DNA from: Magallana gigas
Lineage: Eukaryota
Assembly (NCBI RefSeq): GCF_963853765.1
Contig: NC_088854.1
Coordinates: forward strand, 22,506,001 to 22,570,000
Direction: 5' to 3'
Length of the DNA stretch: 64,000 nucleotides
The notes under the pieces are model-generated. The model was not told where the DNA came from, searched no databases, and saw only the letters and a program-made list of their open reading frames with translations. Both the position numbers and the translations under genes were made by a program. Positions 17,124 through 33,610 of the stretch are shown here, piece by piece. How positions within the stretch are numbered: position 1 is the stretch's first letter; every line of letters starts with the position of its first letter.

Positions 17124-20100
17124 ATGGGAAACTCCCACCCTAGGGACTTGAGATCAGGAGCCATCCTCTCCAACAGATCAACGGCCTACACAAACTCCAT
17201 CGGTGAGAGAATTTTGTTTAAGTACAGAATGATAATTGAGTAATGTAGTGTGTGTTTGTATCTTTATTATCGTTCGTGCATTTATTAAATAAATAGTCTT
17301 TGATATGTTAACGCTAGACTGTTAACGCTAGATGGAAACAATATTGGTATACACAACTTAAATAAAGTGGTTGTGTTAATAAAATTTAACATTAAGTTTT
17401 TAGGTGTTGATTGAATGTAAACACCGATGAATTCACACAGGATGAAGCTCTGCCATCCAGTCAACTGGATGTTGTATTAAAGGTCTGGAAAATTGACTGA
17501 ATAGCATAGCTATGCCATTCAGTCACTTTCAAGTTATCTTTCTGTTGACAGAATAACAGAATGACAGAGTGCCATCCTGTGTCATCAGCAATGCATGTGT
17601 AACGTGTTTTGGGTTCGGTGATTGAGACCAGTCTGGGGAATGTGTTTATTTAACAATCATATATGAATACCGGCATAAAACGATCACAAAAACTACGAGT
17701 CAATATATACAGATATAGTTGTAAGGATGACCTATCCTTAAGCATGCAAAACAAATAATTCACAAGTTATTTATAAGGGATGGGGCTTGATGATCTGTGG
17801 GTTATAACCCGGGGCTCTATCCGAGGCACAGGTCTCAGCCTCGAGACCTGCGAGATCTGTCCTGATAAGGCTCTATGCCTATATCACATGTACAGGGCTG
17901 TATCTCTGTAGCCGACACAAGCTGCAGCCAGGTACACTCAGTTAATAAAATACGAGTAAATATTAACGCTCTATTTAAAGATTAACCCAATACGAACACT
18001 GTGCAGTCGTATTAACGTACCTACTCCTTCGACAGCCGAACACAGAATCAGCTCTTCTCTCGAGTGTGCTCTGATATATAGTAGTGTCATCCGGACTATC
18101 CTCGCACATTACCATTAGCATCAAAGATAACACCCGTATGACATAAAAATTATCTGAACCCCAAACCCGATCATTTGTTACATAACCCACGCCTCATTGC
18201 TTCATGCGTCCTCGCATGACGAAACGATAACAGATATTTTTTTTTATTTTTTTTTTTATCTAAAAAGGATGACGTATCAAACATGAATAATGTACAGAAT
18301 GAGTGATGGATGTATAGCACCTTCTTGGGGATGAACATGAATAAGCATACATACACATGCAAATAACAAAAATGTAAAATGAAACAAAATGTTTGACAAA
18401 CACAGTACAGCTACAATGTTTATAAGTATCTACAAATCAAACAGTTCTTCACTTTCTTTGATTCTCTTAATTTTCTGCCCATTTTCATGGTATTTGGTGA
18501 TGGTGATCTCCTTCACTCTGCGATGATAGCCCTCTGTTTGAGTAGATTCATCTACCATGATCTTGGATAGGACAGGATCCAGGTTGTCAGTTTGAATCCC
18601 AAACTCCACACTTTTCTTCGACACGGTTTCTTCAACAACGCCAAGGTTGGTTCGTTTAGACGAAAACACTGGACTTGGCGCTGTTCTTTTTCGAATCACT
18701 CTTCCTGAGATGAAGTCATCCTGAGAGGTTGATGGTAAAGCTTCCATCTCTTTTTCTGCGAGTTCAGTCCGAACCTCGCCGAGTTGAACTTCGGGGTCCA
18801 CGTCCCAGTCACTGTCGTCTTCCTGATCATGACTTGTGTCCTTACAAGAAAGGTCTAAAATGCTTAATGAAAGTGACAACAGCCAAAAGCTCCTTTCTGG
18901 TGACGCAGTACTTCTTTTCTGATTTACTCAGGACTTTACTTCCATACGCCACAACCCTTTCTTGGCCATCTTGCAGTTGTGAAAGAGCAGCACCCATAGC
19001 ATACTGACTCGCATCTGTATCTAATATGAACGGCTTCGTAAAGTCTGGATGCGTGAGAATATGCGCTGATATCAATCTATCTTTGAGGAGTTGAAATGCG
19101 TCCTGGCATTCGTCAGTCCACTTGAATGGAACAGACGCCTCTGTAAGTTTATGTAAGGGTTGAGCGATTCGAGCAAAGTTAGGGATAAACTTTCTGTAAT
19201 AACTGGAAAGACCGATAAAAGAGCGCACCTGTGTCTTGTTTACTGGCTCTGGCCAATGTTTAACAATCTCTACCTTCTCAGGATCAGTCTCGATCCCCTG
19301 TTCCGAGATGATATGCCCCAAGTATTTCACCTGTCGAGCAAACAACGAACACTTCCTTGCCTTCAGCTTCAGTCCAGCCGCAAGAAGCTTTTCGAACACA
19401 AGTTCTAAATTTTGCAGCATGTCATCAAATGTCTTTCCATAAACGATTATATCATCAAGATATATAAGACAAATCTGCCATTGTAAGCCAGCCAGCACAG
19501 TCTCCATCAATCGTTCAAACGTGGCTGGGGCATTGCACAACCCGAACGGCATTACGTTGAACTCATATAGACCCTGTCGGGTGACAAATGCCGTCTTTTT
19601 CTTATCCTCTGGATCTAGCTCTACCTGCCAATACCCAGCATTCAGGTCCAAAGTACTGAACCATTTGGCGCCTCGTAGTTGATGCAGAGACTCGTCAATA
19701 CGAGGTAATGGGTAGGCATCCTTCGTTGTTATACTATTTAGACGTCTGTAATCGACACAGAACCTTGTGGATCCGTCTTTCTTCTTTACAAGCACGATTG
19801 CTGCTGACCACGGGCTCTGAGAAGGTTCTATGATACCTCTTCTTAGCATGTCAGATACGTGATTTTGTACCTCTTCTTGCATATGAAACGGCAGACGCCT
19901 GGGTGCTTGTTTAATTGGTGCATTGACACCAGTCTCTATCTTGTGTCTGACCTTGGCGGTTCGGCCTACATCTTCATCTGTCTCTGAAAATAGAGCTGCG
20001 TACTTCAAAAGAAGAGCCTTTGCTTTCATGACATCATCTTTATCTATATGACTTGTGCTGCTAATGAATAGCTCTTGCAAATGAGCCGGCAACTCTCTGT

Positions 20101-23017
20101 TCACATCCAAGTCTCTATTTCCCTCTGACACCAAAGAAAGAACCTCATCAACAGCATGTAACTTCCCAACAACAGTACCTGGGTAGATGGTCTTGCTATC
20201 ATCCGAAATATTCATGATACGGAGCGGAATAGTGTCCTGTCTACGGACAAGTGTTTTAGCCAGCATACATGAATTCTGAAACTTTTCAGAGGGTTCTATC
20301 AGTCCAGCTTTGGTTGGAAGTCCTCCATCAGAACTTGCACGTATTTGCCCTTCAACTACCAGTTCTGATCTAGGCGGTACAGTCACTCGGTGAATAATGG
20401 CCACCTTATAATAGCTCGCTGACCCCTCAAGCTGAATCGGGTGTTCGATACCAGATATTGATATCTGATGCATCCTCATGTTAATGACGGCCTCATGCCT
20501 CACTAGGAAATCTAGTCCAAGTATCCCATCTACTGTCAAGTCTGCGACAATCATTTCTTGCTGTAGGGCAATGCCATTCAATGTAAAATCTACTGGAGTT
20601 CGCCCAAGCACTCGTAGTACTGAACCAGTAGCTGATAGTACATCCCGTTCTACCTCAGTCAACGCGTGATTTGCATCCCTTTTAATGTTCTCATAACAAA
20701 TTGTGGATAGCAATGATACAGTAGCACCTGTATCAACCAATAGGTAAGCATCCATCCCATGTATGCGAGCAGTGACATAAACCCCTTTTTCATTTATAGA
20801 GTGTACTACTCTTGAATACTGATCACTAGAACATTGGTTTTTCTGGAAACTTGTATCAGTTTTGGGATTCGTTTCTCTTGTACTATTAACTTGTGTTAAT
20901 TTGTCATCAGACCCCTTATTCAATTGTGGGCAATCTTTTCTCAGATGCTTGTCGGATCCACATTTATAACATTTCCTCGTCCGGTTACTATCCCTTGCAT
21001 GTGTTTCCGGGCGAGGCATGCGTCTCTGGCTTTGAGACTGAAACTTCCATTGTTTCAAATCTCTCATATCGCGCTGTAACGACCGCATGTTTTTCTCGAC
21101 GGTCTCTATAAAATTATCGAGTTTTGAAGCTTTGGACGAGTCTTCAGTATTTTCACTCATTGTCCGGACAGCATCTGTGTGGCGATTCTCTGCCCTATAA
21201 TATGCTTCCAGCTCAACAGCTCTCTGTATTGCGTCATTCAAGTTTATGGGTCTAGCCTGCTTTATCTTAAGACGCATTTCCGAGTTATGTAGCCCATCTA
21301 AGAACTGTTCAGTAGCTAGTATTTCCCGAACATCATCGGGGGCTGTCGGGTAAGCTAAATTCACGAGTCTCCTTATGTCCTGTCCCATCTCCGGTAAACT
21401 TTCAGAAGCCTTTTGTCTCCTTTCCCTCAGCTGTGCTCTGTATAGCTCAGTTTGATTCATAGGGGCGAATCTATCTTGCAAGGCCTTCACTAATTTCCTA
21501 TAGTTCTGTCTCTCGTCTCTGGGCTGATTTCCTAACACACCTTGTGCTAGTCCCCTCAGGGATGCAGCCAAATATAGCCCTTTCTCAGTCTCTGTCCAGT
21601 CATTCAAAAGACAGACTGATTCAAAATGGGACAGATAATCATTCCATAAACCGGATCCGTCGTATGTTGCAGGTTTTACAAAGTTCCGAGATCGGACCGG
21701 TCCAGGATTCGTATTACTTGTTCTTGGGTTTGCGTTGTTCTGCACTGGCGGCCGGTCACTAGGTACAGGATCCTCATCATCACACAAGCACACATCTCCA
21801 GACACATAGCCACTCACACTATCTCTCCGTCTCACGTACGGGGTACTGGTACTCATGCCTGGTCTGGGTCTCCGGCCTCGGCCTGGAGAATTCGTAACCC
21901 GTAGAGAGTCATGTATCTCTCTACTGAGCCGATTTATTTCCCCCTCTAAATATTCTACATCGGCGTGTAAATCGCGCACGCTCATAATTAATATTATATT
22001 AACAATTTGTAGAAAACAATTGACTGATCAAAATCCCGACGCTGCCACCAATTTTGTAACGTGTTTTGGGTTCGGTGATTGAGACCAGTCTGGGGAATGT
22101 GTTTATTTAACAATCATATATGAATACCGGCATAAAACGATCACAAAAACTACGAGTCAATATATACAGATATAGTTGTAAGGATGACCTATCCTTAAGC
22201 ATGCAAAACAAATAATTCACAAGTTATTTATAAGGGATGGGGCTTGATGATCTGTGGGTTATAACCCGGGGCTCTATCCGAGGCACAGGTCTCAGCCTCG
22301 AGACCTGCGAGATCTGTCCTGATAAGGCTCTATGCCTATATCACATGTACAGGGCTGTATCTCTGCAGCCGACACAAGCTGCAGCCAGGTACACTCAGTT
22401 AATAAAATACGAGTAAATATTAACGCTCTATTTAAAGATTAACCCAATACGAACACTGTGCAGTCGTATTAACGTACCTACTCCTTCGACAGCCGAACAC
22501 AGAATCAGCTCTTCTCTCGAGTGTGCTCTGATATATAGTAGTGTCATCCGGACTATCCTCGCACATTACCATTAGCATCAAAGATAACACCCGTATGACA
22601 TAAAAATTATCTGAACCCCAAACCCGATCATTTGTTACACTATATGTAACTCTTTCTTCTACAGGTTACGAAACGGTGTCCATTTGTAGTGACAGCGACT
22701 CAGACCTTCCTTTCCGTTTTAGTTTTACGAGACTTGCTAACCTTCCACCCTTGCCCGGTGTCCATCCTTTGGACTACAAGGCCTATCTCAACACCTCTAC
22801 TATCTCTACTGTCAGCACCAAACCGTCAAAAACAGGAAGGAATCCTGGGCGCCAAACCAAGTTTCATTTACCCATGATTCCGAGCCACACTCATCAAATG
22901 AATACTGGGGGTTTGGTTACAGTGAAGGAAAAGACCAAGGAGAAAAAGTCGAACAAAAACAGTAGGAAAAAGCAAAAGGGGTCTAGAAGAAAAAGAAGAA
23001 CTTTTCAAAGACTATAA
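17124..23017 (+). CDS. Gene E candidate: two-exon 143-aa protein with basic C-terminus; its intron carries the LTR element
   Basis: Exon 17124-17202 (MGNSHPRDLRSGAILSNRSTAYTNSI, donor G|GTGAG, phase 1) joins the acceptor CTTTCTTCTACAG|22665 in frame (YETVSICSDSDSDLPFRF...KKQKGSRRKRRTFQRL*). Exon 2 could instead be an alternative last exon of gene B. Confidence 0.5.
17435..17582. repeat. Small fold-back repeat immediately left of the LTR element
   Basis: Outer arms ACACAGGATGAAGCTCTG / CAGAGTGCCATCCTGTGT and inner hairpin TGACTGAATAGCAT-AGCT-ATGCCATTCAGTCA. Confidence 0.6.
17598..18182 (-). repeat. 3' LTR
   Basis: Direct repeat of 22055-22639 with TG...CA ends. The minus-strand purine-rich tract GAGGCGTGGGTTA (18183-18195) abuts it. 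Confidence 0.97.
18430..18820 (-). pseudogene. C-terminal remnant of an accessory ORF (or pol extension) of the LTR element
   Basis: About 130 open codons between the deletion breakpoint and the 3' UTR (EDDSDWDVDPEVQ...GIQTD...ESTQTE...KEITITKYHENGQKIKRIKESEELFDL*). No integrase motifs. Confidence 0.6.
18842..21985 (-). CDS. gag-pol: Gag-Pol polyprotein (1047 aa): gag, CCHC knuckle, aspartic protease, RT, truncated RNase H
   Basis: Motifs CYKCGSDKHLRKDC, LVDTGA, MPFGLCNAPATF, YLDD and ILDTDAS...ELLAV. Ends HFRPFL* with no integrase. Confidence 0.97.
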   Translation of the reverse strand: MSVRDLHADVEYLEGEINRLSREIHDSLRVTNSPGRGRRPRPGMSTSTPYVRRRDSVSGYVSGDVCLCDDEDPVPSDRPPVQNNANPRTSNTNPGPVRSRNFVKPATYDGSGLWNDYLSHFESVCLLNDWTETEKGLYLAASLRGLAQGVLGNQPRDERQNYRKLVKALQDRFAPMNQTELYRAQLRERRQKASESLPEMGQDIRRLVNLAYPTAPDDVREILATEQFLDGLHNSEMRLKIKQARPINLNDAIQRAVELEAYYRAENRHTDAVRTMSENTEDSSKASKLDNFIETVEKNMRSLQRDMRDLKQWKFQSQSQRRMPRPETHARDSNRTRKCYKCGSDKHLRKDCPQLNKGSDDKLTQVNSTRETNPKTDTSFQKNQCSSDQYSRVVHSINEKGVYVTARIHGMDAYLLVDTGATVSLLSTICYENIKRDANHALTEVERDVLSATGSVLRVLGRTPVDFTLNGIALQQEMIVADLTVDGILGLDFLVRHEAVINMRMHQISISGIEHPIQLEGSASYYKVAIIHRVTVPPRSELVVEGQIRASSDGGLPTKAGLIEPSEKFQNSCMLAKTLVRRQDTIPLRIMNISDDSKTIYPGTVVGKLHAVDEVLSLVSEGNRDLDVNRELPAHLQELFISSTSHIDKDDVMKAKALLLKYAALFSETDEDVGRTAKVRHKIETGVNAPIKQAPRRLPFHMQEEVQNHVSDMLRRGIIEPSQSPWSAAIVLVKKKDGSTRFCVDYRRLNSITTKDAYPLPRIDESLHQLRGAKWFSTLDLNAGYWQVELDPEDKKKTAFVTRQGLYEFNVMPFGLCNAPATFERLMETVLAGLQWQICLIYLDDIIVYGKTFDDMLQNLELVFEKLLAAGLKLKARKCSLFARQVKYLGHIISEQGIETDPEKVEIVKHWPEPVNKTQVRSFIGLSSYYRKFIPNFARIAQPLHKLTEASVPFKWTDECQDAFQLLKDRLISAHILTHPDFTKPFILDTDASQYAMGAALSQLQDGQERVVAYGSKVLSKSEKKYCVTRKELLAVVTFIKHFRPFL
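22033..22050 (-). promoter_or_regulatory. Primer-binding site complementary to tRNA-Leu 3' end
   Basis: Plus strand ATCCCGACGCTGCCACCA matches the eukaryotic tRNA-Leu 3' end ATCCCACCGCTGCCACCA (recalled) at 16/18, including CCA. Confidence 0.8.
22055..22639 (-). repeat. 5' LTR
   Basis: Direct repeat of 17598-18182; followed on the minus strand by the PBS after a 4-nt spacer. Confidence 0.97.
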
Positions 23018-26173: not shown

Positions 26174-27472
26174 TTTAATCTTTCTCGATGATTACGCCAC
26201 AGTTTACATAATTTGCAGACCTTTTGCAAAATAAAAAAAACTAAAATGTAATAGACGTAAGCAGAGCAGATATTTTCCTGTTGTCATGTAAAACATGAGT
26301 AGTCCCATAGGCGAGTTATTGTGTTGGAAGGACAATGCATAATACACACAGGGAAGGGTTAAAAGTACCCAGTACACATTCATTTTCAAACAATCCATGC
26401 ATAGTGATTGAACTGATTAAGATAAAAAAACTTCTTTGTATGTCTAAAACATAAGTTATTACGAACTGCCATTTTACTTTTCGTTATTTACCTTTCTCAA
26501 TTCCCAAGTAGACGTCCCAAAAACCAATTAAAACTGTCGCTTAATTCCGAAGCTGCACACACCGCATGAAAAATATCACCAACCGTTATTTATTAAAAAC
26601 TTATATTAAAGTTCGAACCTTACATCTATTGAAAAACCGTGTGTACTTTCGTTCATTTTAATGGATCGAGGTTCGGCTATTCAGTTTGGTGAAAGCCTGT
26701 TTATGCAAAAGCAAATTAATCGATTAGGTTTAAAGGGAAGATAAATGAAAGCATGCCCGTATTGTTGTGGGCAAGGCTGCAAGGGGGTATGAATTGCAGA
26801 ATTAAATCCCTGAACAACGAAAATTGAATTAAAAAACGATAAGGAGAAGACAGACAATTAAACGACTTTGTATTGCAATGTGTCTGACTGATGGGGATCG
26901 GGTAGATGCAAGAAAGGTAACTCTAAATTAGACGATTCTTCTAAAGTCATGTGGTTAGACCGCTTAGTTCAACTTCTATTGAGGGAGAGCTAGAAATAGT
27001 TTCGTGACCCAAACTATGATTTTCATTAATCGATCGGGATTTTTCATCATCGTATTGAACTACTAGTATTTCATATTGAAAATGACCAACGTTCTCTTCA
27101 CAAGCCACCATTCAAAGTCCCCAAAATTGTATGTTCCAATGTCCCGGTCCCTTGGGGGACACACTTAATACATGCGATCGAAAAAAAATAAATAAAAAAA
27201 TAAAGCATGTGTTGATGCATACATGTATATTTTATTGACTATATATTTCTACATACCAACACAATGTAATAATCATCGCAAAAACTGTTGAACTACTATT
27301 TACTATTTATAATAACGCATTGAAAAATTATTACTGGAGCTAAATTAAAAACATTAAAAAGTTATTAAATATTCAGTTAAATTAAATTAAGGAATAAATT
27401 AATGTTAGAAATGTTGTATATATATTTTTAATAAACATTTTTAAACGACCGAGAATTCTTCACAAAAAGTTT

Positions 27473-30400
27473 CTAACAAGATTCTGATCCGAACGAGACA
27501 TCGTCATCATCTGTACTGAGGATGGAAATTGTGGAGAACGGACTTCTCGCCCGAAATATGGCGGAATCGAAGCTATACAGGCTTATCCCGTCCGGTCGTC
27601 TGGGCATCCGGCCTCTCATATAATCCACGATACTGTCTGTGTAGATACACGTGATCTTTGGAGGTGGGTGAATCGAAAACTCGTCAGTACTGAAGCCTGG
27701 TTTGAACAAAGGTACAATTTGAATTGCTCGTTTTGGTCTAAAATAATTAACAGGTCTAGGAGAGTTGATCATAAGGGATTTCTTGGGATCAAAGTGTTGA
27801 AGTCCCACTTTTTCTCCCTTTCGAATGTCAATAGGTTTTTCTTCTTTTTTCTTCTTAAGGTAGAGTTTTAGACGTTTAGTCAGCATTACAATGACGACGA
27901 CCAAGAAAATTATAAATAATCCTAATAATATGAATAGGTAGTTCAAATCAGCAACAAATGGAGCTTCAGTCGTGGCTGAAAAAAATTCAAAACACAAATA
28001 TTATGTGTTTTTTATTTTTTACGATGATTTCGAGACGAAAATTACAATGATAAGACTTACGTACTGGGGAGTATAATTTGACAGGTGTCTGAAAAATCAT
28101 AAATTTTGGTGATTAGCTTTATCATAATATGCTTTTGATTTATCATCATTTCAACGATATTCATATGTAAAATGCCTAATGCACCTGTTATATCCTTTAA
28201 TTCAGCGGATGAACTTGTTGATGGATAGGCTGTAAAATTTACGGAATTTCCACAAAAATTTGGTTTCTCTTCTAAGAATACAGTTCCATTCATGTAGTTT
28301 GTAATTTTCTGCAAATATTAGAAAGGCATCAACATGCTTAAAAAAATCGACGAATTTGTCACAAGTGCACTTCCTTTAAATTAATATAAATTAATATATA
28401 ACACTGCATTTGAAAAAAGGTGTATTTTTATTTTCATGTTTGTCGCGATATGCTCGCAATATGCTGTTTTATTTTTAGCTTTAAGTTTTTATTTTATCTT
28501 GATCCTACAAACAGAATATGACTCACAAAACAGGAGAATCTGTATGTGGATGAAGTCAACGTATCATCGTTGTTCCACACTGATAAATACAACTGACTGT
28601 CAACAGTCTTTGAGAAGATGCAGGTGTAGATGCCTCCATCTGAATAACATTAAAAAAACCACAAGTAACCATGTCAATACCCAGATAGCCTGGAGAAAAT
28701 AAAAAAAAAATTAAAAGTTATTATCATAATTAATAATATTTCGGAAAATAAACTAGAATCAGTCGCTGCTCTAAACACAATATTTCACCTGAAAGTGTTT
28801 TCTCGGTACAATCTCCTTGCGTAAAGTTGAGCATGGTTTTGTTAGTACAGCCGTCCATTTCCGCCGTCACACAGTTTTCTGTTGTCCCCGAGTGACTTGT
28901 AAATGTGATATTACTGTAGACCATCTGTAAGGCATCGGGACAGAGGGTCTGTATGGCGTCATCTTCCACGGCATCTGACAGACAAATGTTATTGTTAATG
29001 AATATTTCATTTGATTTGATTTTTTTAAATATGAGGATTTGGTATTTGATCCATTTTCTTAATTGATCATGTAAAATCCGCCTACTGTAGTATGTTCATT
29101 AAATGCGTTGCAATTTGCAAAGTTGAGTAGATGTTGTTTTCATAATTTTTTTTATCTAAATTAATTATCTATATAAATGTTGATATCAACAACCGGAAAG
29201 GTTGTTTATCACGTGTGAAAACCTACAGCAGCAGTATTGTATACAACATAGTATTATGATGTCCATTGTTAAGTACGTACGTAAGACAAACTTTACAAAA
29301 AATACTATAGTTATATAGTAGTTTATACCTTTACGTAACAGTACAATGAAGTTTGACGGATCTATGTAGCTTCTAGTGCAGATATTTTCATATGAGTTTG
29401 ATTTGTCCTCCGCAATCCCGACCATATTTTCACGGATAAGAGTATCTACAGCTATTCAAAACGTTTCATTCAAGAAAGTGTAACAACAAATGAAACTTTT
29501 ACACGTACAAAAGAAATCAAACCACAATCTCAATAAAAAAAAACCCAGTTGTTTTCTATTTAAGTCATCAACAAAATAAACCAAACATTAATTGAGACTT
29601 GAATTAGACAATGTTTCTATTTCATTTATTTGGACATTGTTAGTTCTATTGTCCTACCTTTGAATACACTGTTATATATTATACATATATATACCTGTTG
29701 CGTGGTAGTAATAGTTCAGCTGGTCATTGACATTGTAGATATCCAGGCAAATGTAAAAGAAGACGTTGGTTCCAAATAACACATTGAAATTCATTGACCT
29801 GAAAATTTATTAATATATAGAACATACAATTTAAACTTATGAAGGAAGTATGATTTTATGACCTTTTTAAACAACGATGCAAGAGGGTTTGATATTAAGA
29901 CACAAAGTTGGCGCTTCAATATAACGACCTGTCAAGAAATAAATTTTCTTTTTCTCGAACTCGCCATCATCCACTACGACACATTACAGGGGTTCAATTC
30001 TCATTTCGGACGTTTTTTTCCTCTAATTAAGGACAGAAACAGTTTAAAGTCACTTCACTTAAATAGTAGGGGAGATAAATACATTGTCGCATGTTGAATA
30101 TAGACACGCGCAAACATGAATATGGTTTTAAGAAACACAATTGACATGTGTTACCTTATAGTGAAGCGGTTTGCGTTGACTTTGGTCAGACATGTAAAAT
30201 TATAGTACTCTATGGTGGGGTTGTTTGGGTCGGCGGAGGGGATGTAGACCTTGTAATTATAGATGGAATCCGTTGTAATGGACAAACTGCCTCTCTCTGC
30301 ACTCGTCCATTCTCCCATTAAATAAGTCGGAAATGTACAAGTTCCATCTAAGAGAATATTAACAAAGTTGCAACTGTTAGTAAGCAGGGTTCAAAGTATA

Positions 30401-31334
30401 AAACTCATCCTAAGTCCAAAAAGAGAGTATGAATAAGCCGTACCTACATGTATATGTGAAGATAATTATACAAATCTACATTGTGCGATGAACTAATAAT
30501 ATCGTAGCATCGGTATAACAAAAATACACACGAGAAGTTTACAAAAATACGATTAGGAAATGCATGTACACCTTAGAGCATATTGGATACGACGTCAAAG
30601 TTTTAAACGTCCATTTAAATGTACATTATACTCGTTCTCAAATCATTTTTCACCATATTTGGTGTGCATTTGCGTCTGATTTAAAAAAAATGGTTGATAT
30701 TGTTCTAAACTATTCGAATGTTTAATTTTCTGTCCATTTTAAACGTCCATTTAAATGTACATTATACTCGTTCTCAAATCATTTTTCACCATATTTGGAG
30801 TGCATTTGCGTTTGATTTAAAAAAAAAATGGTTGATATTGTTCTTAACTATTCGAATGTTTAATTTTCTGTCGATGTTACATTGTACTTTTATTATACGT
30901 CAATTTTAGCCATACCACCATCCTTCGGTGTTTCAAAAACCCTTGATATTACAAACAACAAAAATTTTACCCCAAAAACATTTAAAAAGAACGCAAATTG
31001 TAGTAAAAAATGGTACAATAATCATTTTTTTCCAATGAAATTTTGTTAAGGTTGAGGTCAGATTTTCCTAATTTCTAAGTTCACAAAGAAATTAATAAAA
31101 AAAAAACCCGTGTTTTAATTTAACATAAATATGAATTAATTTATTATATTTTACGCGAATCTTTTAAATATTTTTTAAAGTAAACATTAGAATGCCTACA
31201 AAAATTATTCTTACGCGGCGTTACAGATTTTAAATTAAATTAATATATAAAGAAACTATTTTACCTGAATATGGAATACCTAATCCCAAAATTAGCAATC
31301 GAATTAACGAGCATTTAATGAAAAGAAAATTCAT
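27473..31334 (-). CDS. Gene D: 12-Cys type-I TM protein, about 479 aa; possible 316-aa secreted isoform
   Basis: Exons 31334-31265 (MNFLFIKCSLIRLLILGLGIPYS), 30347-30155 (CTFPTYLMGEW), 29798-29695 (104 nt as in B), 29451-29329, 28974-28789, 28639-28527 (YLSVWNND), 28308-28185, 28088-28065 (microexon DTCQIILP) and 27975-27473 (TM YLFILLGLFIIFLVVVIVML). The first exon is the least certain. Confidence 0.85.
30601..30872 (+). repeat. Tandem duplication, 2 x about 136 bp
   Basis: Unit TTTTAAACGTCCATTTAAATGTACATTATACTCG... starts at 30601 and again at 30737 with few differences; lies in intron 1 of gene D. Confidence 0.9.
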
Positions 31335-33610
31335 TGCTACAATATTCATGATGCTTGAAACTTTTTCCGTAGCCACAGTCACAATTTCGGTGGCAAAACA
31401 CGAAAAAGGATAAATATGCAAACCTTTGTAGTTATTAGCAACAGGTTGATACAAACATATTTCTTCTCTGGACACCCTTTGTTTCATCGGTTCAACGATA
31501 CGGTTCTTTTCACCAGCAACAAACTCTCTTTGTTTAAATCTAGGTACGTTGGTTTCAACTTACAAGTCAATGTAGCCATAAAGGCATATCAAACTATAAA
31601 TAAACTTACACCAAGGAAGGTGAATTTATCAGATCGTTTTCCAGAAGGTGGTAAAACAGTTTGGACACTGATGAATAACTGAATCTATATAATGAATCGT
31701 CACATGCCCCATCAATAGTTGTTGAACAGTTAGATTTTTATTTTTATTTTGTATCTCTTATCATTTTCAGAGGTTTTTCATGAAACGCATCTGGTTGCAG
31801 TCGCAAATGAGATGTCTATTATTATCACAATACTTGCTCATGGAGACACATATACATTGCCTGCTGCCTAATCCAGTTGTGTAAATATATATTTGCATAA
31901 TAAAATATGTTCAAATTAAATCAACAATACTTGCTCTTGTGAATATGCAAATCCCAGTATGAAAAAATACATCTTCTATTTGTACTTAAGAAAAAATTAT
32001 CAACCCTCAGAAAGAGAGTAGTATAAAGTTTCATTATTTTCACTAAGAGGATATGTTCATGACTGATGAGCCTCTCAAATAGTTGTCTCAAACTAGTACT
32101 ACATGTATATATACATGTTACTAGTACTAAATGTACATGTCACAGCTTGTATGAAAATTTACATACATGTACTTTAAAATGTTTTGTAGGTTTGTGCTGT
32201 CTAAAACCATTGGATAGTCAAAGTACATATATTCGTCTTTGTACAGTCGAAGATCTTAAAATTTGAACAATTTGATGGTCTGGTGTGGAAAGAGCAACAT
32301 TTAAATAGACACATATATTAATTAAGCTAACGTTCTCTCTTAGACAACTAGAAATATATGAACTTCTATAGCTTTACCTTCAACTATTGAACTTCGCACT
32401 TTGCAAAGTAATAACATGTGTTTGTTGTTTTTTCTTATGTTAAAATCAAAATAAACGGAATAGTGAACTTTGAACGTTTTGCTATGTGAATAGAGAGGAA
32501 ACGGGAAATAACAACTGATTGGTTATCATAAATGTCAAGAGCGTTAAGTACAATTTTTGTTTCACAACATATTTCTGATATATCTGACATCAGCCATTGG
32601 CATATAATTTTGGTTTAGGAAGAATTTATTGAAATAGATGATATGGTGATTTAGTACGAGCGTTAAAAAACCAACGAAAACTTTTCTATTTTAAAGCTAT
32701 TTAAAAGAAAAAGGATTTTTTTTCTCAAAAAAATAGTAATTGTTTATTGTTTAAAACGTTAGGAACCGAAAGGGTAAAACAATATAAACCAGCAATAATT
32801 ACATGTATGGATAAAAAGGGCGTGTGATTTACTGTATCATTTCATGAGTCAGGATTCTGAACTGAACAAAACAAACAAAGCGTTTGGTGTAAGATTTCCT
32901 TTGAACAAGTAGAGGGTACAAATAAAATATTTATAAAAAATTAAAACAAAAATGTTAAACGATTTTATTAGATACATACATTACCATATATATGGCTACA
33001 GAAATACATATCAGAAGCAGTTCCAATACATCTTAATAAATATTATATTTAATGAACACACCTATTACGAAACGAAACCCTATGTTCTTTTTTTAATTTT
33101 ATAATATACAGATTGCGGAATAATCTAATAGTCAGAAATTACGTTTTACAGAAACTGATATTGAAATCAAACCAGTAACTTTTATTTTTAAAGTATGATA
33201 ATATTTTTGATATTGAAGATTATAAATCTGTTTCTGATCAAGGCAAAATATATCGATCCTTATATAATGGATCTAATCTTATTTCCATATTCCAAACAAA
33301 TTCAAAATTACCATATGACATGATAGATACTTGTGTATGGTTTATTTTGGAGCATTTTCAACTATTTTTAAACGAATCATTCTTGATGTACTCTTTCCTG
33401 AATTGGAATTTTCTGGATGATTTCCGCATGATTTACCAATCATGAAAACAACATAAAAATGCAATTGACAGCCTGAACCTAGATCCTATTAAAAATAAAC
33501 ATTTTTGGTCAGTTATATAAGAAATACTTATTGTGATAGTTCATTGTTCAGTTTGAATAAATAATGACGAGACTAGCTTAAACCAGAAATTACTCATACA
33601 TTCTAGAGAT

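What the first reader, a model, noticed from the sequence alone, without database searches (positions are those of the whole stretch)
28059..28088. Tandem 5' splice sites 4 nt apart could switch receptor D between membrane-bound and secreted
A microexon starting at 28088 supplies the 12th Cys; its homolog in gene C is the 24-nt exon DTCQPTTQ. In D the exon is followed by GTAC-GTAAGT. The first GT (GTACGT) gives 24 nt in frame to the TM exon (479 aa). The second, a perfect GTAAGT, gives 28 nt and reads DTCQIILPSTHD-stop: a 316-aa complete ectodomain with no TM. The stop lies in the last exon, so it should escape NMD. This is a compact way to make a soluble decoy or opsonin from the same gene.
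Basis: partly seen in the sequence, partly recalled or inferred. Interest (0 to 1): 0.72.

Follow-up and report, generated by a model that had tools for sequence, protein, structure and literature searches.

The report
Oyster tandem splice donors, both used
In a Pacific oyster gene for an uncharacterised cell-surface protein, two splice donors 4 bases apart are both used in real transcripts, one keeping the membrane anchor and one cutting the protein off just before it; both forms are already in public gene annotation, and the mechanism is a well-known kind.

Summary
On the minus strand a 24-nt microexon (28088-28065) is followed by GTAC-GTAAGT. The window is Magallana (Crassostrea) gigas, gene LOC105321891.

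- **Coding outcome.** My models equal RefSeq letter for letter. The proximal donor gives the 484-aa membrane form (XP_019920269.3). The distal donor gives a 321-aa form ending DTCQIILPSTHD (XP_034302050.2).
- **Both donors are used.** Spliced contigs of two RNA assemblies from different studies carry the distal joint 28061|27975. A full-length cDNA contig from a third run carries the proximal joint 28065|27975.
- **Conservation.** The donor block is kept as GTAMGTAAGTC in 7 of 8 oyster loci (Magallana, Saccostrea echinata, Ostrea) while other donors and introns drift. Saccostrea cucullata has lost the distal GT.
- **Class.** This is a GYNNGY (delta-4) tandem 5' splice site, the commonest alternative-donor class.

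Not shown: regulation, secretion, or any decoy or opsonin role. One caveat matters. Two assemblies start from a first exon without a signal peptide, so not every distal-donor transcript can encode a secreted protein.

It is a real, conserved member of a known kind, already annotated, and of modest interest.

The parts
28065..28088 (-). 24-nt microexon (penultimate exon), phase 1. It encodes (D)TCQIILP and holds Cys312, the 12th ectodomain Cys.
   Evidence: The acceptor joint 28088|28185 is present in RNA contigs of X1 and X4 and in cDNA contig L010.
28059..28064 (-). Proximal 5' splice site GTACGT (cut after 28065). In frame, it gives the TM isoform. Weak U1 match, with C at +4.
   Evidence: The joint 28065|27975 is in the spliced cDNA contig L010. 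U1 complementarity is 7/11, duplex -3.0 kcal/mol.
28055..28060 (-). Distal 5' splice site GTAAGT (cut after 28061). It adds GTAC to the exon and shifts the frame by +1.
   Evidence: The joint 27975|28061 (skips 85 nt, GT..AG) is in contigs of RNA runs X1 (depth 14.2) and X4 (depth 4.5, a 587-nt contig spanning exon 7, the 28-nt exon and the last exon). U1 complementarity is 8/11 with 6 contiguous, -5.7 kcal/mol.
27976..28060 (-). Last intron: 85 nt from the distal donor, 89 nt from the proximal one. Also seen retained in X1.
   Evidence: joint table, and record 2 (27946-28090, depth 11.8).
27966..27968 (-). TGA stop of the 28-nt (distal-donor) frame, 8-10 nt into the last exon.
27473..27975 (-). 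Last exon. In the proximal-donor frame it encodes TTEAPFVAD, a TM helix (about 27881-27946), a conserved 130-aa cytoplasmic tail and a TAG stop (27475-27473).
   Evidence: The tail is 69-96% identical in oyster orthologs and recognisable in scallop homologues.
28185..28308 (-). Exon 7, upstream of the microexon.
31265..31349 (-). First exon 1b, with a hydrophobic signal peptide (MNIVAMNFLFIKCSLIRLLILGLGIPYS). It is needed for the short isoform to be secreted.
   Evidence: maximum 9-aa Kyte-Doolittle mean 2.57. Used in RefSeq X1 and X4.
31424..31487 (-). Alternative first exon 1a (MKQRVSREEICLYQPVANNYK), no signal peptide, spliced directly to exon 2.
   Evidence: The loose end of an X1 contig maps to 31426-31455. 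L010 and RefSeq X2 use it. Maximum Kyte-Doolittle mean 0.77.
27473..31349 (-). Coding span of LOC105321891 isoform X1, nine exons: 31349-31265, 30347-30155, 29798-29695, 29451-29329, 28974-28789, 28639-28527, 28308-28185, 28088-28065, 27975-27473.
   Evidence: All internal junctions from exon 2 on were seen in RNA contigs. The translation is identical to XP_019920269.3.

Best explanation
This is a genuine GYNNGY-type (delta-4) tandem 5' splice site at the penultimate microexon of Magallana gigas LOC105321891. The gene encodes a type I membrane protein whose Cys-rich ectodomain is built from DUF7043/44-like and DUF7042/45-like modules.

**Shown.** The spliceosome cuts at either GT. The weak proximal site /GTACGT keeps the frame and yields the 484-aa form with a TM helix and a conserved cytoplasmic tail. 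The strong distal site /GTAAGT adds four bases, shifts the frame and stops after five further codons (PSTHD). That gives a 321-aa protein with the whole 12-Cys ectodomain and no anchor.

**Inferred.**
- When combined with the signal-peptide first exon, the short form is secreted.
- Because its stop lies in the last exon, its mRNA is stable.
- The weak-upstream, strong-downstream arrangement is held by selection in oysters, because both products (or at least both cleavage options) matter.
- The ratio is set at 5'ss selection (hand-over from U1 to U5/U6), as in other overlapping donors.
For: - **Sequence and frames:**
- **Identity to RefSeq:** identical to X1 (484 aa), X2 (477 aa) and X4 (321 aa). 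UniProt A0A8W8KY72 and A0A8W8KYQ6 also end in PSTHD.
- **Distal joint 28061|27975:** present in RNA-assembly contigs from two studies, with no proximal joint assembled there.
- **Proximal joint:** present in the 1721-nt fully spliced contig L010.
- **No retrocopy:** neither joined form occurs in the genome, so the joints come from RNA.
- **Conservation:** AGTAMGTAAGTC is kept in Magallana, close relative L001, L009, two Saccostrea echinata loci, Ostrea edulis and L008, although the preceding Pro codon varies (CCC/CCT/CCA) and the introns are unalignable.
- **Statistics:** donor positions +3 to +11 are invariant at 8/9 sites, against 6/45 for five other donors of the same gene across three genera, Fisher p = 2.3e-5.
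- **Frame outcome:** the distal frame stops within 3-12 codons in every species.
- **TM frame is functional:** the tail is conserved out to scallops.
- **Literature:** regulated GYNNGYs tend to have two consensus-like sites and conserved flanks (PMC4267661).
Against: - **No quantification.** Raw-read runs gave 0 and 4 reads, none on the junction. Contigs show presence only, so neither the ratio nor regulation is known.
- **One lineage lost the distal GT.** Saccostrea cucullata reads GTAAGACAGTC, so the short form is dispensable there.
- **No conserved short-form tail.** The peptides after the frameshift differ in length and sequence: STHD, STHH, SNNN, STHHRGPFCC, STYHGSSVCCRS.
- **Annotation gap.** Truncated isoforms are annotated only in M. 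gigas, not in C. angulata, Ostrea or Saccostrea. This may only reflect RNA-seq depth.
- **Signal-less first exon.** In X1 and L010 the transcripts start from exon 1a, so a distal-donor transcript of that kind would encode a protein that is neither secreted nor anchored.
- **Base rate.** GYNNGY splicing is mostly noise in mammals (PMC4267661).
Confidence: 0.7

Rival explanations
1. The GTAAGT is kept as a U1 landing pad for the microexon, and the short isoform is a by-product. A 24-nt exon with a poor donor (GTACGT) needs a strong adjacent U1 site to be defined. Cleavage at the distal GT is then a tolerated side reaction, or a way to turn down the membrane protein. It makes no functional soluble protein.
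For: - Where the proximal site is itself strong (GTAAG- in Saccostrea), the distal GT can be lost, as in S. cucullata.
- The frameshifted tails are not conserved.
- The distal-donor form occurs in an assembly whose transcripts start from a first exon without a signal peptide.
- Most GYNNGY events are noise or expression tuning (PMC4267661).
- No truncated isoform is annotated outside M. gigas.
Against: - The distal form is the only, or the main, assembled path in two RNA assemblies from independent studies. That is far more than a minor side product.
- S. echinata keeps the distal GTAAGT in both gene copies although its proximal site is already a perfect GTAAGT. A landing pad would not be needed there.
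- The truncation point lies exactly between the last ectodomain Cys and the TM helix, leaving a complete ectodomain.
Confidence: 0.27
2. Only one donor is really used, and the other isoform is an annotation or assembly artefact.
For: Within any single RNA assembly examined, only one of the two joints was assembled.
Against: - The two joints come from different runs and are each embedded in multi-exon spliced contigs: 587 nt in X4 and 1721 nt in L010.
- De Bruijn contig building pops the minor branch of a 4-nt bubble, which explains one form per assembly.
- RefSeq and Ensembl/UniProt models independently list both forms.
- There is no genomic retrocopy of either joint.
Confidence: 0.03

Closest known systems
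GYNNGY (delta-4) tandem alternative 5' splice sites (Wang et al. 2014, NAR, PMC4267661)
   Same: Two GT dinucleotides 4 nt apart are both used as cleavage sites. The isoforms differ by a frameshift, with a stop in the next exon (72-74% of human cases do the same). Two consensus-like sites and conserved flanking bases are, in mammals, the features of the regulated minority.
   Different: Here the frameshift stop falls in the last exon, directly ahead of the TM helix. The predicted outcome is therefore a complete anchorless ectodomain rather than an NMD substrate. The event is in a mollusc, where this class has not been surveyed. Regulation was not tested.
Yeast SRC1/HEH1 overlapping 5' splice sites /GCAA/GUGAGU (bioRxiv 10.1101/2025.06.06.658024)
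   Same: A weak upstream and a strong downstream donor lie 4 nt apart and overlap. The two mRNAs encode a long and a short protein. Per that preprint, the strong downstream site dominates. As I recall from Grund et al. 2008, not re-read here, the two Src1 forms differ in membrane topology.
   Different: In yeast the downstream site gives the long protein and the upstream one is GC, not GT, and depends on Hub1/Snu66. In the oyster the downstream site gives the short protein. No trans-factor dependence is known. There is no homology between the genes.
Membrane-bound/soluble receptor pairs made by alternative splicing (for example esRAGE, sIL-6R, sFlt-1; recalled from general knowledge, not re-read here)
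   Same: One gene gives a TM form and a form that keeps the signal peptide and ectodomain but lacks the anchor.
   Different: Those cases mostly use exon skipping, intron retention or intronic polyadenylation. Here a 4-nt donor shift does the job. Secretion and ligand binding of the oyster protein are unknown, as is the ligand.
RefSeq/UniProt isoform models of M. gigas LOC105321891 (XP_019920269.3, XP_011418678.4, XP_034302048.2, XP_034302050.2; A0A8W8KY72, A0A8W8KYQ6)
   Same: They are identical to the two products derived here, so the isoform pair itself is already public.
   Different: They are automatic models named 'uncharacterized protein'. Neither the tandem-donor mechanism nor its conservation across oysters is described. 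I found no paper on the gene or on DUF7042-7045.

Membership tests
GYNNGY (delta-4) tandem alternative 5' splice site | Two GY dinucleotides separated by two bases at one exon-intron boundary | tested here: met
   CCCCA|GTAC|GTAAGT at 28065-28055, minus strand.
GYNNGY (delta-4) tandem alternative 5' splice site | Both GYs used as cleavage sites in transcripts | tested here: met
   The distal joint is in X1 and X4 RNA contigs. The proximal joint is in cDNA contig L010. There is no genomic retrocopy.
GYNNGY (delta-4) tandem alternative 5' splice site | Tissue- or condition-dependent ratio (the regulated subclass) | not tested
   The single read-laying run gave 0 and 4 raw reads. The assemblies differ in which form they hold, but the tissues are coded and depths are low.
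Membrane/soluble receptor isoform pair | The short isoform lacks the TM segment but keeps the whole ectodomain | tested here: met
   The 321-aa product ends 9 residues after Cys312 and keeps all 12 ectodomain Cys. The TM helix is encoded only in the other frame of the last exon.
Membrane/soluble receptor isoform pair | The short isoform carries a signal peptide on the same transcript | tested here: inconclusive
   RefSeq X4 joins exon 1b (signal peptide) to the distal donor. But the X1 assembly, which holds the distal joint, shows only the signal-less exon 1a joined to exon 2. Short contigs do not phase the two choices.
Membrane/soluble receptor isoform pair | The soluble protein is detected outside cells and binds the receptor's ligand | not testable with these tools
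   No proteomic data were available and the ligand is unknown.
Pfam DUF7042/DUF7043/DUF7044/DUF7045 proteins | Score at or above the Pfam gathering threshold (27 bits) | tested here: inconclusive
   Protein D scores DUF7042 23.8 bits and DUF7043 16.9 bits, both below 27. The homologue P0011 scores DUF7042 31.5 bits. The Ostrea and Mizuhopecten relatives carry a precomputed PF23069. The nearest ESM Atlas cluster is 'DUF7042 domain-containing', score 0.93.
HEH1/SRC1-type competing overlapping 5' splice sites | Weak upstream and strong downstream hexamers overlapping by two bases, both used | tested here: met
   /GTAC/GTAAGT. U1 duplex is -3.0 against -5.7 kcal/mol. Both are used.
HEH1/SRC1-type competing overlapping 5' splice sites | Use of the weak site depends on Hub1/Snu66 and on U5/U6 pairing | not testable with these tools
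   This needs genetics or biochemistry.

The most novel reading that the evidence does not exclude
The strong distal donor is the default, so the anchorless ectodomain is the main product in many oyster tissues. The membrane receptor would then be made only where the weak proximal /GTACGT is activated. That would be a conserved, regulated 4-nt toggle, comparable to Hub1-dependent SRC1 splicing in yeast. It would set the ratio of soluble to signalling form of a bivalve DUF7042-45 surface receptor, possibly in immunity.
Probability: 0.22. Interest if true: 0.55.

Novelty: new member of a known kind. Interest (0 to 1): 0.33.

Why it matters
It gives a clean, conserved invertebrate example of a 4-nt donor shift that decides whether a surface protein keeps its anchor. 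It lies in a mollusc and arthropod protein family (DUF7042-7045) with no known function. If the ratio proves to be regulated, the site would be a compact handle for studying 5' splice-site choice at microexons, and for asking what the soluble and membrane forms do in oysters. As it stands it adds little that is new. The class (GYNNGY) and the outcome (soluble against membrane isoform) are textbook, and both isoforms are already in RefSeq and UniProt.

Tried and rejected
- **Raw reads.** X20 gave 0 reads and X21 gave 4, none on the junction, so there is no isoform ratio. The look-up of sequencing runs was busy twice before it answered.
- **Junction pattern in JGI metagenome contigs.** A pattern matching either junction had no hit.
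- **Members of the last-exon ORF cluster (P0001, 181 members).** All those listed are genomic or intron-containing ORFs, useless for counting junctions.
- **Protein fold.** AlphaFold2 on an 8-sequence alignment gave mean pLDDT 41. I ran no fold search on it, so the fold of the ectodomain is undetermined. Profile and word-index searches found too few homologues for a deeper alignment.
- **RNA structure.** No conserved structure was found around the donors: 3 trivial pairs and no covariation.
- **Literature.** Nothing on LOC105321891 or on DUF7042-7045.
- **Earlier findings of this scan.** Nothing bears on this locus.
- **Alternative exon-6 acceptor at 28689.** Rejected because it runs into a stop, and RNA contigs use 28639.
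- **Processed retrocopy as the source of the joints.** Rejected.
- **Tandem as a family-wide trait.** Rejected. Gene C has a single GTAATT. The scallop orthologue has GTGAGTATAG, with only the generic +5 GT.

Full report
**1. What is in the sequence**

Read on the minus strand, a good acceptor (tttttcag) precedes an exon starting at 28088. The exon is followed by GTAC GTAAGT.
- The first GT (28064-28063) makes a 24-nt exon, 28088-28065.
- The second GT (28060-28059) makes a 28-nt exon, 28088-28061.
- The next acceptor puts the last exon at 27975.

I built a nine-exon model from the sequence: 31349-31265, 30347-30155, 29798-29695, 29451-29329, 28974-28789, 28639-28527, 28308-28185, the microexon, and 27975-27473.
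- The 24-nt form reads through TTEAPFVAD, a 22-residue hydrophobic helix, a basic stop-transfer stretch and a 130-residue tail. It is 484 aa.
- The 28-nt form reads ...DTCQIILPSTHD and stops at TGA 27968-27966. It is 321 aa.
- The ectodomain has 12 Cys, and the last one lies in the microexon.

Gene C's homologous 24-nt exon (24026-24003, DTCQPTTQ) is followed by a single donor GTAATT and its own TM exon.

**2. Whose gene it is**

A search with the last exon found a 477-aa protein whose 90% cluster holds named RefSeq and UniProt entries. The gene is Magallana (Crassostrea) gigas LOC105321891, 'uncharacterized protein'. My translations match RefSeq letter for letter:

| Model | RefSeq entry | Length |
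|---|---|---|
| exon 1b + proximal donor | XP_019920269.3 (X1) | 484 aa |
| exon 1a + proximal donor | XP_011418678.4 (X2) | 477 aa |
| exon 1b + distal donor | XP_034302050.2 (X4) | 321 aa |

UniProt A0A8W8KY72 (314 aa) and A0A8W8KYQ6 (306 aa) also end in PSTHD. The isoform pair is therefore already public as automatic gene models. I found no paper on the gene.

**3. Are both donors used?**

*Distal donor.* I laid four runs on 27300-30450. Two RNA assemblies from different studies, X1 and X4, carry every predicted junction from exon 2 onward.
- At the microexon both carry the joint 27975|28061. It skips 85 nt with GT..AG ends, which is the distal GTAAGT donor.
- In X4 one 587-nt contig runs from exon 7 through the 28-nt exon into the last exon.
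- In X1 the exon 4-7 contig (depth 40) runs 28 nt into the microexon and ends at 28061. There the graph forks into the distal joint (depth 14.2) and a retained intron (depth 11.8).
- Neither assembly holds the proximal joint.

*Proximal donor.* Contig L010 from a third run is a 1721-nt fully spliced cDNA. It has exons 1a, 2-7, the 24-nt exon and the last exon joined exactly at my coordinates.

*Controls and limits.*
- Neither joined form exists in the genome, so these are not retrocopies.
- Contig building pops the minor arm of a 4-nt bubble. One form per assembly is therefore expected and says only which form was commoner.
- The two raw-read runs gave 0 and 4 reads, so I have no ratio.

The conclusion is that both donors are used in vivo. 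The distal, frameshifting one is the major form in two of the three assemblies seen.

**4. Conservation**

I recovered genomic orthologues by exact-protein look-up.

| Locus | Species | Sequence after the microexon |
|---|---|---|
| window | M. gigas | GTACGTAAGTC |
| L001 | close relative (96% aa) | GTACGTAAGTC |
| L009 | unnamed oyster (75% aa) | GTACGTAAGTC |
| L002-L006 | Ostrea edulis | GTACGTAAGTC |
| L008 | Ostrea-like | GTACGTAAGTC |
| L024, L028 | Saccostrea echinata, two loci | GTAAGTAAGTC |
| L027 | Saccostrea cucullata | GTAAGACAGTC (distal GT lost) |

- The A before the first GT and the whole GTAMGTAAGTC block are kept in 7 of 8 loci. Meanwhile the preceding Pro codon changes (CCC, CCT, CCA) and the introns cannot be aligned.
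- Across Magallana, Saccostrea and Ostrea, donor positions +3 to +11 are invariant at 8 of 9 sites here. The figure is 6 of 45 for five other donors of the same gene, Fisher p = 2.3e-5.
- In S. echinata both sites are perfect GTAAGT. S. cucullata has lost the distal GT, and its proximal site reads GTAAGA.
- The scallop orthologue has a 24-nt microexon with an ordinary GTGAGT donor. The strong tandem therefore looks like an oyster-family trait.
- In every oyster that keeps the tandem, the distal frame stops after 3-12 codons. The tails differ: STHD, STHH, SNNN, STHHRGPFCC, STYHGSSVCCRS. If anything is selected it is the truncation, not the tail.
- The cytoplasmic tail of the TM frame is conserved out to scallops. 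The proximal donor must therefore be functional.

**5. How it most likely works**

Shown:
- By complementarity to the U1 5' end, the distal site is stronger than the proximal one. It has 6 contiguous pairs at -5.7 kcal/mol, against two runs of 3 at -3.0.
- No conserved RNA structure surrounds the site.
- The arrangement, weak upstream and strong downstream overlapping by two bases, is that of yeast SRC1/HEH1 (/GCAA/GUGAGU). There the downstream site dominates, and the choice is made by U5/U6 pairing at the B to Bact transition (bioRxiv 10.1101/2025.06.06.658024).

Inferred:
- U1 docks on GTAAGT, and the cleavage register is then fixed when U5/U6 take over.
- The short mRNA is stable. Its stop has no exon junction downstream, and it is the assembled path in two assemblies.
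- With first exon 1b, the short product is a secreted ectodomain.

**6. Caveats against a 'secreted decoy'**

- The gene has three alternative first exons, and only 1b encodes a signal peptide (maximum 9-residue hydropathy 2.57, against 0.77 and 1.20).
- The X1 assembly joins the signal-less exon 1a to exon 2, and L010 does the same. Some distal-donor transcripts would therefore encode a protein that is neither secreted nor anchored.
- Truncated isoforms are annotated only in M. gigas.
- In mammals GYNNGY splicing is mostly noise. Where it is regulated, it mostly tunes expression (PMC4267661).
- The loss in S. cucullata fits a rival reading: GTAAGT serves mainly to recruit U1 to a microexon with a poor donor, and distal cleavage is a by-product.
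- Against that rival, S. echinata keeps the distal site although its proximal site is already perfect. The distal form is also far from minor.

**7. The protein**

- Pfam gives sub-threshold DUF7043 (residues 30-119) and DUF7042/7045 (191-293) for D, and above-threshold DUF7042 for a homologue.
- The ESM Atlas places it with mollusc and arthropod DUF7042-44 clusters.
- There is no literature on these families.
- AlphaFold2 on the shallow alignment failed, with pLDDT 41. The fold and the ligand are unknown, and 'receptor', 'decoy' and 'opsonin' remain labels without evidence.

**8. Verdict**

- **Observation:** confirmed.
- **Interpretation:** the core is supported, namely two donors, both used, giving an anchored and an anchorless product. 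Regulation, secretion and function are untested.
- **Kind:** a GYNNGY tandem donor yielding a membrane/soluble isoform pair. It is a new, conserved member of a known kind, with both isoforms already in RefSeq and UniProt.
- **Interest:** modest.
- **Decisive tests:** junction counts across tissues and species, long-read phasing with the first exon, and detection of the ...QIILPSTHD C-terminus in haemolymph.

Noticed in passing
window 31424-31487 (-) and 31265-31349 (-): There are alternative first exons. Exon 1a (MKQRV..., no signal peptide) splices straight to exon 2 and skips the signal-peptide exon 1b, which lies about 75 nt downstream. A third start (MLLLCKV...) is annotated in RefSeq X3. 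X1 contigs and cDNA L010 use 1a. Transcripts from 1a would make a Cys-rich 'ectodomain' with no route into the ER.
   Followed up: partly
window 27976-28060 (-): The 85-nt last intron is retained in a contig of RNA run X1 at a depth (11.8) similar to the spliced distal joint (14.2). X21 raw reads also lie in it. In some haplotypes the intron is open in the TM frame: a 208-aa ORF, P0037, was seen on 41 contigs.
   Followed up: partly
L027 (Saccostrea cucullata, GCA_032062105.1), microexon donor: The distal GT is replaced (GTAAGACAGTC) while the proximal site is strong. This is the only oyster locus of eight that lacks the tandem, a natural 'distal knock-out' for comparison.
   Followed up: partly
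window 13065-13074 (+): A diverged paralogue lies on the + strand (about 8764-13824). Its Cys-bearing segment is fused to the exon-7 equivalent, with no separate microexon. Its donor reads GTAAGTAACC, again with a GT at +5. Use of that GT would also truncate the protein before its TM exon (13380 onward).
   Followed up: no
window 30601-30879: A tandem duplication of about 136-138 nt (95-98% identity) lies inside intron 1 of the gene.
   Followed up: no
window about 17800-22400: This GC-richer block (43-44% against about 32%) holds two identical copies of a coding-like stretch (peptide ...GLSLETCEICPDKALCLYHMYR at 17843 and 22300, + strand). It is probably a transposon with terminal repeats, sitting between the paralogues.
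   Followed up: no
P0008 (667 aa): This homologue is predicted as a fusion of an L1-type endonuclease domain (Exo_endo_phos) with a DUF7043 ectodomain, TM and tail. It is likely a gene-model chimera with a retrotransposon.
   Followed up: no
window 28187 and other sites in 27375-30256: There are many SNPs between the window and the RNA contigs. For example, in X4 G>A on the + strand at 28187 changes Thr to Ile two codons before the microexon. Protein variants such as LYLSVW and LYFAAW occur among M. gigas records. The locus is highly polymorphic.
   Followed up: no
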